Below are positions 15,326-39,712 of a DNA stretch of 64,000 bases, piece after piece. Under the pieces are notes generated by a model. The model did not search any database. It saw only the letters and a program-made list of their open reading frames with translations, and had not been told where the DNA came from. Origin of the DNA: Macrostomum lignano (lineage: Eukaryota); contig NIVC01000927.1 in the NCBI GenBank assembly GCA_002269645.1, positions 124,001 to 188,000 on the forward strand. The letters run 5' to 3'. The position numbers and the translations under genes were made by a program. Position 1 is the stretch's first letter. The number at the start of each line of letters is the position of its first letter.

Positions 15326-15628
15326 GGTGGTTGTAGCTTAGTGGATAGAGCGTCGGACTCGCGACTTGAAGGTCGGAGGTTCGATTCCCAATCCCACTGG
15401 GACAATTTGTGTCCTTGAGCAAAACACTTAGCTATGCATTGCTTCAGTTCACACTGCTGTAAAATGGGTGCCAGCATTAGCTGGGGTAATTGAGGCTGTG
15501 TGTGTGGCGATCCTCAGTCCTTGGACTGAACAACCATATAATAGCTGCGGCTGAGCTGTCAATTGCACATCTGGCCCAATCGGGCCAGGAGTCATTAATT
15601 ATCAATACTAATAATTATTATTATTATC
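15326..15628 (+). mobile_element. tRNA-derived SINE, copy B
   Basis: A box TAGCTTAGTGGATAGAG, B box GGTTCGATTCC, same central domain and (ATT)n tail as copy A. Confidence 0.88.
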
Positions 15629-21964: not shown

Positions 21965-22494
21965 AACTGGAGTTGCATGCAAGCAAGAACAAGACAAGAA
22001 CTGGAAAAGGCTTTTTTGTATCCATTTTCTAGAAACTAATCATTTCTATTTGTTTTAACTCGTCAAAGATCCTCCCGAAGTCCCGTCCGACTGTTAACGA
22101 ACGGCGTACCGACCCCGATTTCTCCGAGGAACAGTGGGAAACCTTTTTGTTATTTACGAGTAACTTAACAACGAATTTCGCAATAAAAGTGGCAGTTGGA
22201 TTATCGCGATCATTGACAGTTCGAATAATTTGACACAAGTTACAAACCCTGGCAACAATCAATTGGCTGCATGATGAAGGCCTTAGTTATTAATAGTTTA
22301 ACTTAAGTGTACAAGGTTTACTAAAGCTTGAAGTTTCTGTCCAAGCCAAGAGCGGGGTCCCCTACCTCAACGTGGAGAAGATGGCCGCCTACCACAAGGC
22401 TCCGCATCGTCTGCTGGAAGGCGAGAGTTCGCCTGCATCTAAGCTAAAATGCAGCTGATCAATTACTACTATCAATTTTCTTTGATTTCTAAGA

Positions 22495-22683
22495 TGCGCA
22501 GATCCTTGCTGTACTGCAGCGCAAGGCCTACGCGTGGACCAGGTCGTGTGAACACGAAGCACTGGCCCGACTCATCAAAAACCGGATTAATTACTTAGTA
22601 GTCCAATGGACTACGTTAGAGGAATTAATCTCTAAAGAACAGAAACTACACTTTGATCTTAGCCAATAAGGCCGAGAAGCGAT
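22495..22683 (-). ncRNA. U2: U2 spliceosomal snRNA, full length (~189 nt), divergent
   Basis: Minus strand begins ATCGCTTCTCGGCCTTATTGGCTAAGATCAAAGTGTAGTTTCTGTTCTT. Stem IIa TTAGAG/CTCTAA; IIb GTAGTCC/GGACTAC; IIc ATTAATT/AATTAAT; Sm-like GGTTTTTGA; stem III GGGCCAG/CTGGTCC; stem IV CCTTG/CAAGG with a 13-nt TGCAGTAC-containing loop. Confidence 0.94.
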
Positions 22684-24049
22684 AAGAAATGTGGCGTTGG
22701 AAACCAATTTTTCTTAAATAATTGAGCCGTACACTAGTCAGAAGCCCTTGTTTTCGTAGCACCTATTATCTTGTCCACTAAACTTGAATAAATAGTGTTC
22801 AATGTGTAAATATCGTACAGAAACGGACCGGTAATACTAAAAAAATTCTTATCTTAAAATGAAGTGACAAAGCAAATTATTTTATAAAATCTAAAAATCT
22901 AATTTTAATTTTAAACGATTTATATACACTATCGAACTATTTTGACCCAAAAGGAATGCGCAAATAGCTCTACTGTAAGTATGAGGACGCAATTATATGC
23001 AATTTTAACTATTGCCGACTCAAACCGTTGGGGCAACTTGGGACGGGAGTTTTCGATTGGTGGAAAGCGGAGAGGCAGGACTGGGGTCCGTCCCGCAAGC
23101 CAGCTGCATTGAAGCTATGAGAATAGGGAGGCAATATAATCTAGCTTTAGAATTTCAGAAACTTTCACAAATTGCGTTTTGCACGGCGCACACATCTTAC
23201 TCTGTGATTTGTTGTTGTTAAACGGGGGTGGGAAGCTGGGCTTACCCGCGGATCAGCCCTAAAGGGGGCTCTGCCGCTAGTGGGGCACTTACCAAGGGCA
23301 CGGGGAATTCCGTGTACCCGAGTTACCCTCCTCGGAAGTCCGAGAACCAATTTAGTTGGGCCCTGACTAAGGCCAGGGGAGGCGAGGGACTTCAAACCTA
23401 CGGTACCGCCAACCCAAAAAGTGGAATCAGGGACGGTGCTAGGACCGAGTCCACCCAGGCCACCCCCCCCCCCCCAGCAGACAAGTCCTCAGGAGTGCGC
23501 TTCAGAAATAGAATTTGAAACCGAAAAGTTTTGGATATGCTACTTAAAGCGGTCCGAGAGCGGGGATACCCCGAAGTCAACGGAAATGGCTTATCAATTG
23601 GAGTGAGTCTGGAAGGCTTGTTTCCGAGGGGGAGACTCCAGGCGGGAAGACCGACCGCCTCTGTTGCTACCAACCCAAGGGTATCGCCTATCCAGCTCTA
23701 AACAGGGCCAGGCCAAGGGGGGGAGGGGCACAAGGAGCAAGAGGAAACCGGACTCAGCCGGTTTTCCCCGATTCGGGACGAACTTCCTTCCCAGGACTCC
23801 AATCCACTGTCAGAGCCGAGACGCAAAAGCAGGGAGGCAACCAGAGGAGCCAGCAGATCGGGCAGGTGGGCAGAGCTCATAACTCCGAAGAATTGGATTG
23901 TGATTTCCTTGTTTTTCCTACAAACAAGCAAGATTTTCATTTTTAGTATATGGATGTAATATGACTTCACACGAAATCTTCATTTTTATTTACTGGTACA
24001 GTGTACATTTATCCCCTTTAGGACATACTAGCGATCGACATACTACTTA

Positions 24050-24725: not shown

Positions 24726-27168
24726 TCAATCAACCTCCTCCATCTTGGCGTCGTCGTCAGCGGCAGCCGAGTCGCCAGCAGCGGCTGGCATCGGCTGATC
24801 GACAGCTTCGGGTTCGTCGGCGGCGTCCTCAATGCCAAGGCCCAGCTTCACCATGCGATGGATGCGGCCGGCGTGGATCTGCGGATCGTCCAGGCTGAAG
24901 CCGGAGGCCAGCAGGGCGGTCTCGAACAGCAGGTGCACCAGATCCTTCACCGCCTTGTCGTTCTTGTCAGCCTCGAAGCGCAGCTTGAGAGCGGAGCAGA
25001 TGGCGTGGTCAGGGTTGATCTCCAGGTGCTTCTTAGCCGCCATGTAGCCCATTGTGGAGTTGTCGCGCAGAGCCTGAAATTGGTTTTGTAGGTAAAAATT
25101 CACGGTTATATCTTAATTGCTAAAAAGACCGACTTATCTGATACTACTAACAGTAGTCTTAAGGACTAAAACAATTTGATAAAATAGATCGAGTTAACCT
25201 ACCTGTGCCTTCATGATCCGCTCCATGTTGGCCGACCAGCCGAACTGCGAGGTGACGATGCAGCAAGGCGAGTCAACCAGCCGGTTGGACACGACCACCT
25301 TCTCGACCTTCTTGTCCAGGATGTCCTTCATAGCCTTGCACAGCGGCTCGAAGGCGGCCTTCTTTTCTTCGAACGCCTTCTTCTCGTCCTCGTCCTCGGG
25401 CAGCTCAAGGCCCTCCTTGGTGACGCAGACGAGCTTCTTGCCGTCGTACTCGCGCAACTGCTGCACAGCGTACTCGTCGATTGGGTCAGTCATGTACAGC
25501 ACCTCCAGGCCGCGCTTTCGCAGTCTCTCAACAAATGCGGAGTGAGAGACTGCCTCCCGGCTCTCGCCGGTGATGTAGTAGATGTCCTTCTGGTTCTCCT
25601 TCATGCGGCTGACGTACTCCTTCAGGCTGGTCCAGTCGTCGCCGGAGTTGGTAGAGTAGTAGCGCAGGTAGTCGGCCAGCTTCTTGCGGTTGGTGCTGTC
25701 CTCGTGGATGCCCAGCTTCAGGTTCTTGCCAAACTGCTCGTAGAACTTCTTAAAGTTCTCCTTGTCCTCCGCGATGTCGTCGAACAGTTCCAGGCACTTC
25801 TTCACGAGATTCTTTCTGATGACCTTGAGGATTTTGTTCTGCTGCAGCATCTCACGGCTGATGTTGAGCGGCAGGTCTTCGCTGTCCACTACGCCCTTGA
25901 TGAAGTTGAGGTACTCGGGGATCAGGTCCTCGCAGTTGTCCATGATGAAGACCCGTCGCACGTACAGCTTGATGTTGTTACGCTTCTTCCGGTTCTCGAA
26001 CAGGTCAAATGGCGCCCGCTTCGGGACAAAGAGCAGGGCGCGAAACTCGAGCTGACCCTCAACGCTGAAGTGCTTCACGGCCAGGTGCTCCTCCCAGTCG
26101 TTGCTGAGCGACTTGTAAAACTCGCCGTACTCCTCCTGGGTGATGTCCTCGTGGTTGCGGGTCCAGATTGGCTTCGTCTTGTTCAGCTCCTCCTCATCGA
26201 TGTACTTCTCCTTGACAGTCTTCTTCTTTTTCTTCTTCTTGTCCTTCTCCGAGTCGCTGCCTTCGTCGTCGCTGCTTTCGTCGTCCTCGATCTTCGGCTT
26301 GTCGGTCTCGTCGGACTTCTCGTCGGCCGGCTTCTCGGAGTCTTCGTCCATCTTCTCAGGCTTTGAGTCCTCCTCAACTTCGGCTTTATCGTCTTCAATC
26401 TGGAAATGAAGGAATGTTACCGACAGGTGAGATCATTGAATATGATTAACAGGATGCCGACACACTAATTGTCTCTTGACGCAAACTTACCTCCTTATCG
26501 CGCTCCTTCTCGAGCACCAGCTTGATAGGATAGCCGATAAACTGAGAGTGCTTCTTGATGATCTCCTTGATCTTGCGCTCCTCCAGGTACTCGGTCTGGT
26601 CCTCCTTCATGTGCAGGACAATCTTGGTGCCGCGACCAATGGGCTCGCCAGTGTCGGGCCGGACGGTGAAGCTGCCGCCGGCGGAGGACTCCCAGGCGTA
26701 CTGCTCGTCGTCGTTGTGCTTGGAGTAGACCTCGACCTTGTCGGCCACCAGGTAGGCCGAGTAGAAGCCAACGCCGAATTGGCCGATCATGCTGATGTCA
26801 GCGCCCGCCTGCAGCGCCTCCATGAACGCCTTGGTGCCAGATCTGGCGATGGTGCCCAGATTGTTAACTAGATCAGCTTTAGTCATGCCGACTCCGGTGT
26901 CAACGATGGTCAGGGTGTTGTTAGCCTTGTTGGGGATCACCTTGATGTACAGCTCTCGGCCGGTGTCCAGCACGGACTGATCCGTCAGGCTTCTGTACCG
27001 AATTTTGTCCAAGGCGTCGCTGGCATTCGAGATCAACTCGCGGAGGAAGATCTCCTTGTTCGAGTAGAAGGTGTTAATAATTAAGCTCATCAGCTGAGCG
27101 ATCTCAGCCTGAAAAGCAAAAGTCTCCACCTCCTGCTGCTGGTTGATTTCGACCTCGTTGATGGTCAT
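24726..27168 (-). CDS. HSP90: Cytosolic heat shock protein 90 (Hsp83/HSP90A), 740 aa
   Basis: Exons 27168-26491, 26399-25203, 25073-24726. Motifs [44 protein letters not shown] and [10 protein letters not shown]; C-terminal MEEVD. Confidence 0.99.
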
Positions 27169-35900: not shown

Positions 35901-37972
35901 AAAGGAGAGGCGAGAAAATAAAAGAAGACAGGAGTGGAGAGAAGAGGAGATAGGAAGAGAGAAGCAGAGAGGAGGAGAAAGGAGAAAGGGGAGGAGAAGA
36001 AAAGAGAGAAAAGAGAGAAGAGAGAAGAGGAGAGGAGAGAGGAAGAAATTAGAGGAGATTAGAGCAAAGATCACTGAGAAGAGTTATAAACACTGAGTAG
36101 GCTGGATTGCTATTATAAAGTTTCAAAGGACCTGAGGGCCAGATAGAAAGGCCTTATAGGCTAAATAAAGATCCACTTATAAAATATCTTAAAAAGTACA
36201 ATAAAACATTGGCAAACTCTAATTTTAATTAATGTGAAAAAGTTTAGCATTAGTACTTTTAGTAATTATTATTGTTGCTTTGAAAAAAGATGAAATATAA
36301 TCTTACAATGGCAATTGAATGTTTCTTTTATTTTCTAACTGAATTTGCAGTTGTTTAAGCACGGTTATCTTCTTGATTCAAAATATTTTGTTTTTGTTAA
36401 AACTATGGCTATGGCTACGGGAACTATGGGAATATGGTAATTTTAAGGTCCCTATGGCTACGGAATATAGAGAATTAGAATAAGCTGTAGTTTTGCTTAC
36501 AGCTATGGCTATGGTACATGGACCCTCTTTACAGTGGAACACTATTTATTAAGCAATAAAGAACAATGAAATTACATTTAAATATGTATCATTGTGGTGT
36601 GTATGCAGGAAAAAAGAATTTTCTAAATCGCTTTAGTAGAAGCTGAGTAAAATGCAATTTTCCGATCCTTATAGGAATTTATATGCTTAAATAATAAACT
36701 TATATTGAATATAGTATTTATTGCAAACAAACTCTACAAAATACACTTTGTCAATAGTAACAAAAGTGGTAAACAAATAAACCCTCAAAAAGAATGCTAA
36801 ATATGTTGTAGAATTATAGAATATAATATTATAAGATACTTAAAGTTAATAAATACATTATTAGAGCTTTTCTATCATTTCTATGAGTCATTTTAGTTGT
36901 AAATTAATTTACTTTTTTAATAAATCATCTTATTAAAAAAAGCTATATGTGAATAATTTGTGTTTTTATAGATGTTTTTAATTTTTTTAAACTCAAATAA
37001 AATTATGTTATAGCTTTATTGTTTTCAAATCGCCAAAAACAAATTTTCAAAAAACTTACCCCTAATTCTTAGATTTTGCCACATACATAATTATAATCTA
37101 TAACTATACTATAAAGAATTAGGCCCTATAAATATCAATATTGCACTTAATTATATTTTTAAAGATATATAATTTAGTTGAACATAAAACTATACCCATA
37201 GTCAGGAAGATGGCATTTTACTTAGAAAATTCTGGCGTACACAGAAAAATTTTGGGCCAATTTTGGCATACACGGCATACCACGGTTTAGAGAAAGTACC
37301 CCATGGTGTGCAATGGCATGCCACAACACACAATTATACGCCGCGCCACTGTGGGCATGGGGCCCTGCCCTCCTGCAATATCCCAAATCCTGATGCATTA
37401 CATTTATTTTAAAAAAAAGTTTTTTAAAACTGGAAAGAAAAGAAAAAATGTTTTTTCTAGTGCTAATTTTCTTTCGTTAAAGTCATTGAACTTTCAACAC
37501 AAATGAAAACTTTGTTGAAGTTTGATGTTTTACATTATTTTAAACTTCTATTATTATTTAACGGATTATTATTGAAACTTCCATTCACATGCACTACCCC
37601 CCAGTCTGTTGGCGTACCACTGGGTTCCGATCTCGGTGTACATGGTGTACCAGTTTTTTTTACCGACTTTTTATTCCAGCGTACCCGTGCCATGATCCTG
37701 ACTATGGAACTATACTAGGGCACTGGGCTAGGTGGGGTCTTAATTACTTACCACTAAAATAATATCTTATATCTTAGGCCTAATCTTTAAAATATATATA
37801 ATATTCCCTAGACAGGTGACTTATGGTACGCAATTATGTTATAAAAGATATACATTGACAGTAACAATAAAATAGAAAACATTTTCATTTATTGCATCAG
37901 TAACCTTACCTTAAGGTCTGAATCATCCTCCTCCAATAAAGCCAACACCCCAGCTGCAGAAGTAAGTGTCAT
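29913..37972 (-). CDS. PSMD1: 26S proteasome non-ATPase regulatory subunit 1 (Rpn2), ~1062 aa
   Basis: Exons 37972-37910 ([17 protein letters not shown]), 35661-34645, 34248-33352, 31774-31219, 30568-29913; phase-consistent. Motifs [32 protein letters not shown] repeats, [11 protein letters not shown] and [10 protein letters not shown]. Confidence 0.97.
30628..31133. repeat. 31-bp minisatellite (~16 copies) in PSMD1 intron 4
   Basis: Unit CCTGTAAACCAATCCCTGAACTCAACACACA. Confidence 0.97.
31960..33220. repeat. 33-bp minisatellite in PSMD1 intron 3, interrupted by an insertion at 32347-32672
   Basis: Unit GATCTAGGGCGCCGAATTGGCCTGTTTGAATGG. Confidence 0.95.
32347..32672. mobile_element. 326-bp insertion flanked by duplicated CTAG
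   Basis: CTAG at 32343-32346 and 32673-32676. Removing the insert and one CTAG restores the higher-order unit seen at ~32210. Internal direct and inverted AAAAC(A/G)GCCAT motifs. Confidence 0.6.
34350..34440. repeat. 15-bp short tandem array in PSMD1 intron 2
   Basis: CAGCTAGATGTTTGC, about 6 copies. Confidence 0.85.
35850..36065. repeat. GA-rich low-complexity tract in PSMD1 intron 1
   Basis: Almost pure purine sequence on the plus strand (GAGAGGAGAAAG...). Confidence 0.85.
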
Positions 37973-39034
37973 GATTTATATAACTGTTCTTTTATTACGC
38001 AATGTAATAACAATGGCGATTAAGTGCTAAGCAACAATAGAATTGAATTTAGTATATGGATTAGTTGGTGTTCGACGATGTGTGTACAACGAATTCCTTC
38101 CTTCCTACGCGCTTAACTTACTAAGCAAAATTTAATATTTGAATTAATTTTATACTACTAAAACAAATAATATACAATGATGATAAAGCGCACCGCTTAT
38201 AGTTAATTTTACTATTAGAATTTACTTCCTAACCGAAAATTATATGTTTTAAAATACTAATAAAACATATTTTTCTCTAACACAGTTCGAGTATCTTAAA
38301 CCGCTACTGGATGTTTAATCTTTGATCTTTGATATACTATCGATCACATTAAGCTTTTATAGTGTTAGTTATTAGTGCATACACGGTATGATTTTGTCAT
38401 TTTATTAATTCACTGGACATTTTATTTTCCATGAACGAATTTAAATGTGCTTTTGAACTTTTGCTAATGTATTTTAAAAGCTTGTGTCCTGAGGTAGACC
38501 ACTTCCACTTGATAATATATTTGGTGTATTACACGCGTAGAAATGTTGGATGCACGTCCGCTAATGTCTACTAATCGCTTAAGTCTGCCGAATTCCATTA
38601 CCTTGTCTTGTTAGGGAATGTCCTTGCCCTTCAGTGGATTCTGCTATTTTCTGCTATAGTTCCGCAAATATGTATACGAGCTATTTGCCACTCTAATTTT
38701 GACTCTCATTCATACTGTAATGCGTGGATTTGTTCAACTGCTCTGACAGCATGCGTTTGCATGATTTAGCGCATTAATTAGTCATATTCAGATACACATC
38801 ACTGTCTTTCTACAGGACAGTTAATTAGTGTCGACCTACCCCTGTGTAATGAGTGTAGCTCAATTGCAATAAACATGAGCTTAAAGCCTATGATATATTT
38901 TATCATTCTGGGACTAGTAATATATTCTTTGAATTATACATGTAAATACGAGCTACTTTTAATTCTTGTTTTGCATAACAAAACAGATAACAACAAAGTA
39001 CGCAGCCCCGCATGTAAGGTCACAGCAACAGGAG

Positions 39035-39712
39035 AACAGGGCATGTTAGATGTCGCGCCGCAGAGCCTGAGAACAGACGAAGTCCGCCCAGTTGGCAGTG
39101 TCGGGCGCCTCGGCGTCGCATAATAGGAGGCAGTCCACGTATCGACGGGTTTGGGCCTGACCCCGCCTGAACGGGCCCTGCAAGGTGAGCAGCAAGGACG
39201 TCTTAATTGAACAGGTTGGGAGCAGTAGCAGCCCTCGGTCCGGATCACGTGGCCCACCAGTTGAAGTCGCCGCCGGCGCAGGATGGTGGACGGGCGCTGC
39301 AACTTGGCTCAATCGTACAGGTCCTCGGTCCCGACGCTCTCGCTCGTCAGCTCGAATGGCCGCACGGAGCAGCCCTGAGTGCACCGAGTCCAACTGCCGC
39401 TCCAGCGTAGCCGTCAGCGTCCACGTCTCGGCGTTGTAGAGCAGGACGGTTTCGACCACCGACTGCCACAGCCGAGCCCTCTGGCGGTCGGTCAGAGCTT
39501 CAGACTTGAGGACGGCTCGGATCGAACGGAAGGGCCGCCCAGGCAAGTCCTCTGCGCCGCCGGAGGTCTTCCTCCACGTGGGGGCACCAGACCGCCGAGG
39601 TAGGTGAACCGCTGGCAACGTGCGAGCTGGTCGTCTGCCCGTCTGCGCCGCGGCACGTCAGGTTCGCTGGGATGTCGGCCGGCACAGTCAGCACCTCGGT
39701 CTTCAGCTTATT
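39035..39712 (-). mobile_element. 5'-truncated, frameshifted non-LTR retrotransposon (RTE-like RT C-terminal region)
   Basis: Fragments in several frames: KTEVLTVP...EEDLRRRRGLAWAA, LWQSVVETVLLYNAETWTLTATLERQLD and LRRRRLQLVGHVIR. These match the LYG.ETW and RRLRW.GHV.R signatures of RTE-clade LINEs. Confidence 0.82.

What the first reader, a model, noticed from the sequence alone, without database searches (positions are those of the whole stretch)
22495..22683. Structurally intact U2 snRNA with altered branch-point recognition sequence, Sm site and loop IV
Seen: stems IIa, IIb, IIc, III and IV all pair despite sequence far from vertebrate or insect U2, which argues for selection on structure. 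Yet three near-invariant elements differ. (i) The branch-point recognition sequence is GUAGUU instead of GUAGUA (position 22644, equivalent to human A38), predicting pairing to AACUAAC-type rather than UACUAAC branch sites. (ii) The Sm site is GGUUUUUGA rather than GAUUUUUGG. (iii) Loop IV is CGCUGCAGUACAG versus UAUUGCAGUACCU, altering the AUUGCAG U2B''/SNF contact. Established: variant snRNAs exist in animals, and trypanosome U2 uses a non-canonical Sm site with dedicated Sm proteins. Inference: either a lineage-wide rewired U2 or a specialised U2 variant serving an intron subset or trans-splicing. AACTRA-type candidates occur upstream of some acceptors here (e.g. ~21293, ~61329) but are too few to test.
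Basis: partly seen in the sequence, partly recalled or inferred. Interest (0 to 1): 0.75.

Follow-up and report, generated by a model that had tools for sequence, protein, structure and literature searches.

The report
Flatworm U2 snRNA gene, unusual bases
This is a real, well-folded U2 spliceosomal RNA gene from a flatworm-like animal; its altered intron-recognition base turns out to be a rare but recurring natural variant already known from Giardia, and only its odd Sm protein-binding site is truly unusual.

Summary
Window 22489-22683 (minus strand) is a full-length U2 snRNA gene (Rfam RF00004, 144.7 bits, E 1e-29). All stems are intact, and it carries GUAGUU, GGUUUUUGA and loop IV GCUGCAGUACA exactly as described. 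[quoted passage not shown]

The three "near-invariant" deviations are unequal.
- U38 is rare: 0 of 93 U2 5' ends in one independent sample. It is also recurrent: seven metagenome contigs from at least four lineages carry intact GUAGUU U2 genes, two of them inside U1/U2/U5 clusters. Giardia U2 has GUGUAGUU matched to an AACUAAC branch site.
- The loop IV change lies within natural variation; one panel U2 has CGCUGCACUACAG.
- Only the G at the first Sm-site position is unique among 23 non-redundant natural U2 genes.

There are no retro-pseudogene hallmarks. Branch-like sites in the window show no A preference at position -5.

The most likely reading is a working U2 gene with a tolerated, lineage-derived branch-recognition base. 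Whether it is this genome's main U2 or a variant or dead copy cannot be decided, because no close relative or other copy was reachable.

The parts
22489..22683 (-). U2 snRNA gene, full length (195 nt as aligned; the mature 3' end is probably a few nt upstream of 22489)
   Evidence: Rfam RF00004, 144.7 bits, E 1.2e-29, model 1-192/192; fold z = -3.9
22657..22677 (-). Stem-loop I (RNA 7-27), with a 5-nt loop UUAUU (one extra U relative to the consensus)
   Evidence: Model alignment, all pairs standard
22652..22654 (-). AAA run holding one extra A relative to the consensus GAUCAA-GUGUAGU
   Evidence: Insertion in the model alignment. The same insertion occurs in 8 of 93 independent U2 5' ends that carry canonical A38
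22644..22649 (-). Branch-point recognition sequence GUAGUU; 22644 is the U that replaces the canonical A (human A38)
   Evidence: Sequence. The same state is found in 7 metagenome U2 genes and in Giardia U2
22616..22635 (-). Stem-loop IIa (RNA 49-68), UUAGAG / CUCUAA, six Watson-Crick pairs; compensated relative to the canonical UAUCAG / CUGAUA
   Evidence: (four of the six conserved-column deviations are these paired changes)
22598..22614 (-). Stem-loop IIb (RNA 70-86), GUAGUCC AUU GGACUAC
   Evidence: inverted repeat I2
22585..22592 (-). 3' strand of alternative stem IIc (AAUUAAUC), which pairs with GAUUAAUU at 22623-22630
   Evidence: Inverted repeat I1; both strands differ from the canonical UUUAAUAU / AUAUUAAA yet remain complementary
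22575..22583 (-). Sm site GGUUUUUGA; G at 22582 replaces the conserved first adenosine of the AUUUUUG heptad
   Evidence: unique among 23 non-redundant natural U2 genes
22536..22568 (-). Stem-loop III (RNA 116-148)
   Evidence: one U-C mismatch at the inner end of the lower helix
22496..22533 (-). Stem-loop IV (RNA 151-188), twelve standard pairs; the loop GCUGCAGUACA lies at 22510-22520
   Evidence: loop IV variants of the same kind occur in panel U2 genes
22713..22721 (-). TTATTTAAG, a TATA-like element at -38 to -30; GTGTACGG at -51 to -44 (22727-22734) is a possible proximal element
   Evidence: Sequence only; not validated, because there is no second snRNA gene of this genome to compare
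22469..22488 (-). A-rich downstream stretch AAATCAAAGAAAATTGATAG, a possible 3' box
   Evidence: Sequence only; similar AAAG/CAA-rich stretches follow the snRNA genes in L007 and L008

Best explanation
This is a genuine, single-copy U2 spliceosomal snRNA gene in the genome of a free-living-flatworm-like animal, and it is most likely functional. It would work as any U2 does. Its 5' end and the AGAUC region pair with U6. GUAGUU pairs with the intron branch site and bulges the branch adenosine. The Sm site and stem-loops III and IV carry the core proteins. The U at the last position of the recognition sequence changes only the terminal pair of the branch helix: the intron base five positions upstream of the branch A would pair if it is A (or G by wobble) and not if it is U. 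Animal branch sites are degenerate at that position, so the cost should be small. That would explain why the same change has arisen repeatedly in fast-evolving U2 lineages. [quoted passage not shown] The loop IV change lies within natural variation. The G at the first Sm-site position is the one real anomaly; it is inferred to be tolerated, or to lower assembly efficiency, without abolishing function. Shown: identity, structure, the three base states, recurrence of U38 elsewhere, and absence of retro-pseudogene marks. Inferred: expression, Sm-core assembly, effect on branch choice, and whether this is the genome's main U2.
For: Full-length Rfam U2 match at 144.7 bits. All helices are intact, with compensated changes in stems IIa and IIc. 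At 64 columns that are at least 90% conserved, the gene deviates only 6 times, and 4 of those are paired compensations. There is no A-tail and no flanking direct repeats. GUAGUU occurs in intact U2 genes on 7 independent metagenome contigs scoring 95-138 bits. L007 and L008 carry it inside U1/U2/U5 clusters, and in L007 the three genes share an upstream motif. Across these U38 genes, 20 of 35 predicted pairs show both-sided compensatory changes, so they are under selection for structure. L007 (U38) is closest to L022 (A38), and the window's gene is closest to A38 genes, so the change arose independently several times. Giardia U2 has GUGUAGUU with the branch site AACUAACAC (PMC3510501). BSL energies: insertion plus U38 in the shifted register +2.0 kcal/mol, against +2.2 for canonical and +2.5 to +4.0 for the insertion with A38. 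G31 and U32 are paired BSL positions in human U2 (PMC13019295). In yeast, losing one of the seven Sm-ring base contacts, including SmE's adenine contact, is tolerated (PMC4986888). Loop IV CGCUGCAC exists in L042, and GUUGCAC in four lineages.
Against: The Sm-site G is unique among 23 natural U2 lineages. In the human system, A-to-G at this position 'dramatically reduced' Gemin5 binding (PMC5131778). Three departures at functional single-stranded motifs with no stem damage is also what a young pseudogene with 3-4 hits could show about one time in eight by chance (my estimate). The gene is solitary and not in an snRNA cluster. The promoter and 3' box could not be validated. It is not syntenic in Macrostomum lignano or Paragonimus. 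Schistosome genomes hold many more U2-like hits than real genes (PMC2770079). There are no expression data.
Confidence: 0.55

Rival explanations
1. This is a young, silent or poorly assembled U2 copy (a pseudogene or minor variant). The lineage's working U2 genes lie elsewhere and are canonical at some or all of the three positions. The Sm-site G in particular would be a disabling lesion.
For: The Sm-site first-position G is unique among 23 lineages. A-to-G there cripples Gemin5 binding in humans. The copy is solitary and non-syntenic. Flatworm genomes carry surplus snRNA-like copies. Intact stems do not exclude a copy only about 3% diverged.
Against: There are no retro-pseudogene marks. The gene is full length, with a TATA-like element at -30 and an A-rich 3' flank. 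Two of its three 'lesions' (U38 and loop IV GC) are states found in evidently functional U2 genes elsewhere. The conserved 5' 48 nt are otherwise perfect.
Confidence: 0.3
2. This is a specialised variant U2 that coexists with canonical U2 and serves a subset of introns, or spliced-leader trans-splicing, through AACUAAC-type branch sites.
For: Flatworms trans-splice (PMC2770079). Expressed variant snRNA genes exist in humans (abstracts listed). Giardia shows that GUAGUU and AACUAAC can be a matched pair.
Against: No class of AACUAAC-type sites is visible. Position -5 of 44 branch-like sites with 3' splice-site context is flat, and CUAAC-core sites are few. No second U2 type is available for comparison. 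In L007 and L008 the U38 gene is the only U2 in the cluster.
Confidence: 0.08
3. The deviating bases are assembly or sequencing errors in an otherwise canonical U2.
For: None specific. The homopolymer-adjacent positions (UUUUU, AAA) are the kind that long-read errors affect.
Against: The deviations are substitutions at three separate sites, not indels. Neighbouring coding exons read through cleanly; HSP90 splices into a perfect 740-aa frame. The same U38 state appears in unrelated assemblies.
Confidence: 0.03

Closest known systems
Canonical metazoan U2 snRNA (Rfam RF00004)
   Same: Length, all stem-loops (I, IIa/IIb/IIc, III, IV), U6-pairing 5' sequences, the position of the branch-recognition sequence, the Sm site between IIb and III, and the UGCA core of loop IV.
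   Different: The last base of GUAGUA is U. The first base of the Sm heptad is G. Loop IV begins GC and not AU. Stems IIa and IIc are re-written but compensated.
Giardia lamblia U2 snRNA (Rfam RF02492; Hudson et al. 2012, PMC3510501)
   Same: It carries GUGUAGUU, the same A-to-U change at the end of the recognition sequence. There it is matched by an extended AACUAACAC branch site in all nine known introns.
   Different: Giardia U2 is a short, highly divergent RNA. The window's gene does not match RF02492 at E <= 1 and is an ordinary metazoan-type U2. No matching branch-site consensus is visible here.
GUAGUU U2 genes on metagenome contigs L002, L004/L006, L005/L008 and L007 (found here)
   Same: Intact U2 genes with U38. 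L005, L007 and L008 also share the extra A. All are derived at otherwise conserved columns.
   Different: They keep a canonical A at the first Sm position, and L005, L007 and L008 keep AUUGCA in loop IV. They are not specially related to the window's gene.
Expressed variant snRNA genes of humans (e.g. RNU2-2)
   Same: Multi-copy snRNA families in which non-consensus copies can be transcribed and incorporated (abstracts listed).
   Different: In humans, canonical copies are known to coexist with the variants. Here no other copy could be examined.

Membership tests
U2 spliceosomal snRNA (RF00004) | Covariance-model score above the curated gathering threshold over the full model | tested here: met
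   144.7 bits against 46, model 1-192/192, E 1.2e-29
U2 spliceosomal snRNA (RF00004) | Conserved 5' sequences that pair with U6 (AUCGCUUCUCGG... and GCUAAGAUCAA) | tested here: met
   Identical to the consensus apart from one inserted U in loop I and one inserted A
U2 spliceosomal snRNA (RF00004) | Branch-point recognition sequence at the canonical place (GUAGUA; the last base is known to vary in Giardia) | tested here: met
   GUAGUU, 5 of 6 identical. The sixth base is U, as in Giardia and in 7 metagenome U2 genes. It was A in 93 of 93 U2 5' ends in another sample
U2 spliceosomal snRNA (RF00004) | Stem-loops I, IIa, IIb, III, IV and alternative stem IIc | tested here: met
   All pairs standard except one U-C in stem III; IIb and IIc recovered as inverted repeats
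U2 spliceosomal snRNA (RF00004) | Sm site Pu-A-U(4-6)-G-Pu between stem IIb and stem III | tested here: inconclusive
   The place, the U5 run and the G-Pu are right, but the conserved A is G (GGUUUUUGA); it is the only such case among 23 non-redundant U2 genes
U2 spliceosomal snRNA (RF00004) | Loop IV with the U2B''/U2A' recognition motif (AUUGCA-type, 11-nt loop) | tested here: met
   An 11-nt loop GCUGCAGUACA with the UGCA core kept. GCUGCAC (L042) and GUUGCAC (L016, L020, L027, L038) occur in other natural U2 genes
U2 spliceosomal snRNA (RF00004) | snRNA-type promoter (proximal element) and 3' box | tested here: inconclusive
   A TATA-like element at -38/-30 and an A-rich 3' flank are present. 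No second snRNA gene of this genome is available to define the lineage's motifs, and schistosome snRNA promoters are reported to be highly derived
U2 spliceosomal snRNA (RF00004) | Expression, trimethylguanosine cap and Sm-protein binding | not testable with these tools
   No RNA or read data for this organism
Giardia-type U2 (RF02492) | Match to the Giardia U2 covariance model | tested here: not met
   No RF02492 hit in the window at E <= 1. L007's U2 gave only 25.9 bits against a gathering score of 100
Retro-transposed snRNA pseudogene | 3' A-tail and/or truncation, flanked by target-site duplications | tested here: not met
   Full length. The only repeats within 22380-22800 are the gene's own stems and one internal 11-mer

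The most novel reading that the evidence does not exclude
U38, the G-first Sm site and the GC loop IV are all fixed in this flatworm lineage's only working U2. That would imply co-evolved partners: a purine preference five bases upstream of the branch A, Sm-core assembly that does not read the first adenosine (for example with no Gemin5-type selection), and an adapted U2B''/SNF protein. Together with the nematode-like and other metazoan-type GUAGUU clusters found here, it would show that the 'invariant' GUAGUA has been replaced repeatedly within animals.
Probability: 0.2. Interest if true: 0.65.

Novelty: new member of a known kind. Interest (0 to 1): 0.4.

Why it matters
GUAGUA in U2 is usually treated as invariant from yeast to humans, and A38 is part of both the branch helix and the BSL. 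A short search of public contigs shows that GUAGUU occurs in intact U2 genes of several unrelated lineages, always in U2 sequences that are otherwise strongly derived (5 of 5 against 1 of 18, p = 1.8e-4). This gives splicing researchers natural experiments on how much the terminal branch-helix pair and the BSL closing pair matter. If the Sm-site G proves functional, it would be a natural test of how strictly Sm-core assembly needs the first adenosine. If this copy proves silent, the finding is an ordinary variant or pseudogene copy.

Tried and rejected
1. Synteny. The HSP90 loci of Paragonimus kellicotti (L001) and Macrostomum lignano (L009-L011) hold no U2 and share only HSP90 with the window.
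2. Strict coupling of the extra A with U38 as a compensatory pair in the BSL. Rejected as a rule: the extra A occurs with A38 in at least four intact lineages, and U38 occurs without it in at least two; association 3/5 against 4/18, p = 0.14. It is kept only as a permissive effect.
3. Shared ancestry of the window's U2 with the L005/L008 or L007 genes. Rejected: its nearest panel members carry A38.
4. A de novo intron set from ORF continuity. Swamped by minisatellite ORFs. Homology gives only about 6 secure introns, too few for a logo.
5. A window-wide branch-like motif test. No A enrichment at -5.
6. Viral-contig scans for base rates. No U2 at all.
7. Searching for spurious ORFs translated from U2 to reach relatives. 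Only low-complexity repeat proteins were found.
8. Literature and supplements for flatworm U2 sequences (Schmidtea, Schistosoma, Macrostomum). Nothing held.
9. The bacterial-type promoter and terminator scan is irrelevant here and found nothing.
10. Exon-sized protein queries misled taxon placement, because the search lists only hits up to about 1.75 times the query length. The spliced 740-aa HSP90 fixed this.

Full report
**What is there.** Rfam's U2 model matches window 22489-22683 on the minus strand over its whole length, at 144.7 bits against a gathering score of 46 (E 1.2e-29). A permissive scan of all 64 kb finds no other snRNA, and a mismatch-tolerant search finds no second U2 fragment. 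With RNA position i = window 22684-i, the sequence reads as follows.
- Branch-point recognition sequence: GUAGUU at 22649-22644, with the non-canonical U at 22644.
- Sm site: GGUUUUUGA at 22583-22575.
- Loop IV: GCUGCAGUACA at 22520-22510.

Stems I, IIa, IIb, III and IV are all standard pairs apart from one U-C at the inner end of lower stem III. Stem IIc (GAUUAAUU / AAUUAAUC) and stem IIb are recovered independently as inverted repeats. The fold is more stable than shuffles (z = -3.9). It omits one inserted A just upstream of the recognition sequence (GAUCAAAGUGUAGUU) and one inserted U in loop I.

**Host and context.**
- The window is animal DNA with short introns and many minisatellites.
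- HSP90 splices cleanly into a 740-aa protein from three exons.
- Its best full-length relatives are two Macrostomum lignano HSP90 proteins (84% identity, 1364 bits), ahead of Lingula (1274) and Dugesia (1256). Exon-level searches also put flatworms first among named hits.
- The host is therefore a flatworm, probably free-living, but not M. lignano: the M. lignano HSP90 loci share nothing with the window except HSP90 and contain no Rfam hit.
- The U2 lies between a Cys-loop channel gene and HSP90. PSMD1/RPN2, Frizzled and a rhomboid gene lie further out.
- No target-site duplication or A-tail flanks the gene.
- A TATA-like TTATTTAAG sits at -38/-30, and an A-rich stretch follows the 3' end. 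Neither can be validated without a second snRNA gene from this genome.

**How unusual is U38?** Two independent samples were taken.
- A pattern that accepts either base at position 38, with or without the extra base, was run over eukaryotic contaminant DNA in 185,579 prokaryote assemblies. It returned 93 U2 5' ends: 85 canonical, 8 with the extra A and A38, and none with U38.
- A U38-specific pattern run over JGI metagenomes returned seven contigs. All are Rfam U2 hits; the full-length ones score 120-138 bits.
- The seven contigs fall into at least four sequence lineages besides the window: L002, L004/L006, L005/L008 and L007.
- L007 and L008 are U1/U2/U5 gene clusters. In L007 the three genes share an upstream motif at about -45 to -65.
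- Across the U38 genes, 20 of 35 predicted pairs are maintained by changes on both sides, so they are RNAs under structural selection and not debris.
- The window's gene is closest to A38 genes (L047, L022), and L007 is closest to L022, which has A38. U38 has therefore arisen several times independently.
- All five U38 lineages are strongly derived at otherwise conserved columns: 6 or more deviations in 5 of 5, against 1 of 18 A38 lineages (Fisher p = 1.8e-4).
- The literature holds a direct precedent. Giardia lamblia U2 contains GUGUAGUU and pairs with the extended branch site AACUAACAC found in all nine known Giardia introns (PMC3510501).

U38 is thus rare but recurrent and compatible with function.

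**Mechanism for U38.** In the branch helix, position 38 pairs with the intron base five positions upstream of the branch adenosine. In the free snRNP, position 38 belongs to the BSL. The human study treats G31 and U32 as paired positions next to the loop (PMC13019295). Nearest-neighbour energies of the isolated hairpin are all slightly positive:
- canonical: +2.2 kcal/mol
- A38U alone: +3.2
- extra A with A38: +2.5 to +4.0
- extra A with U38 in a shifted register (A-U39, G.U38): +2.0

In the extra-A background, U38 therefore does not weaken the hairpin and may strengthen it. The coupling is not a rule, however: the association is 3 of 5 against 4 of 18 lineages (p = 0.14). I also looked for an AACUAAC-type signal in the window. 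Among 44 CU[AG]A[CU] cores followed by a pyrimidine tract and an AG at branch distance, position -5 is A 13, U 12, C 10, G 9. That is flat. It fits a degenerate animal-type branch site at which the change is nearly neutral, but the test is crude.

**Sm site.** In a panel of 23 non-redundant natural U2 genes, every intact member has A before the U-run. In humans, substituting this adenosine by G or C dramatically reduced Gemin5 binding (PMC5131778). In yeast, SmE contacts this adenine, yet SmE triad mutants grow normally, and the authors conclude that six of seven RNA contacts suffice (PMC4986888). The G may therefore be tolerated, but it is the strongest argument for a defective or variant copy.

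**Loop IV.** The first two loop bases vary in nature. GUUGCAC occurs in L016, L020, L027 and L038. CUUGCAC occurs in L002, L044 and L046. L042 has CGCUGCACUACAG, almost the window's CGCUGCAGUACAG. The UGCA core is kept, so this deviation is within the natural range.

**Is it decaying?** At 64 columns that are at least 90% conserved, the window's gene deviates six times. Four of those are the two compensated pairs of stem IIa; the other two are the Sm G and the loop IV C. This argues against long neutral decay. It cannot exclude a copy inactivated recently, since three or four hits that all miss the stems would happen by chance roughly one time in eight (my estimate).

**Verdict.** Of the three anomalies, one is rare but recurrent and already known from Giardia, one is within natural variation, and one is a real outlier. 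I rate the alternatives as follows:
- a functional gene with a tolerated derived recognition base: 0.55
- a silent or minor copy: 0.30
- a specialised variant: 0.08
- sequence error: 0.03

The decisive data are the other U2 copies, reads and RNA of this species, and U2 genes of sister flatworms. None of these could be reached with the collections at hand.

Noticed in passing
L007:337-1222 and L008:148-1572: Metagenome contigs carrying tight U1/U2/U5 snRNA gene clusters, in which the only U2 has GUAGUU plus the extra A. L007's U1 starts AAACUUACCUG, and its U2, U1 and U5 share an upstream AAAC..GG....TACGG motif. From memory these features look nematode-like; this was not tested.
   Followed up: partly
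L012, L013, L021, L030, L032, L053 (CAWUFA03 contigs); L028, L031, L036 (CBDAUV01); L037, L039 (CBDHHR01): Assemblies labelled as bacterial MAGs (Hormoscilla, Anaerolineae, Metamycoplasmataceae, Poribacteria and others) contain tandem arrays of eukaryotic U2 genes, for example a 1.37-kb repeat with more than 30 copies. This is evidently host DNA binned into the MAGs.
   Followed up: no
window 15327-15396 (+): A weak tRNA model hit (31.9 bits against a gathering score of 29) with several non-standard pairs. ARAGORN does not call it. Probably a tRNA-derived or decayed element.
   Followed up: no
window ~1.9-2.8, 5.6-6.6, 18.7-20.3, 41.9-42.5, 44.8-45.9, 49.4-49.9 and 54.3-56.9 kb: Long minisatellite arrays that are open in several reading frames on both strands and produce spurious ORFs of up to 881 aa. 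Several lie inside introns of the Frizzled and Cys-loop channel genes.
   Followed up: no
window 22297-22455 (+): A GC-rich open frame ending ...SGVPYLNVEKMAAYHKAPHRLLEGESSPASKLKCS* stops 34 nt from the U2 3' end, convergent with it. Its identity is unknown; it may be the last exon of a plus-strand gene.
   Followed up: no
window 36001-38000: GC content drops to 0.305 in a window that otherwise runs at 0.41-0.55. An ORF at 39046-39618 (-) looks like a reverse-transcriptase remnant but has no Pfam hit.
   Followed up: partly
window 24726-27168 (-) compared with L009-L011: HSP90 here has three phase-0 exons with introns of 91 and 129 nt. The gene order PSMD1-HSP90-U2 is not shared with the Macrostomum lignano HSP90 loci.
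   Followed up: yes
panel alignment of 23 U2 genes: Every U38-bearing U2 has a rewritten stem IIa and 6-16 departures at conserved columns, against 0-8 for A38 genes. U38 appears only in fast-evolving U2 lineages.
   Followed up: yes
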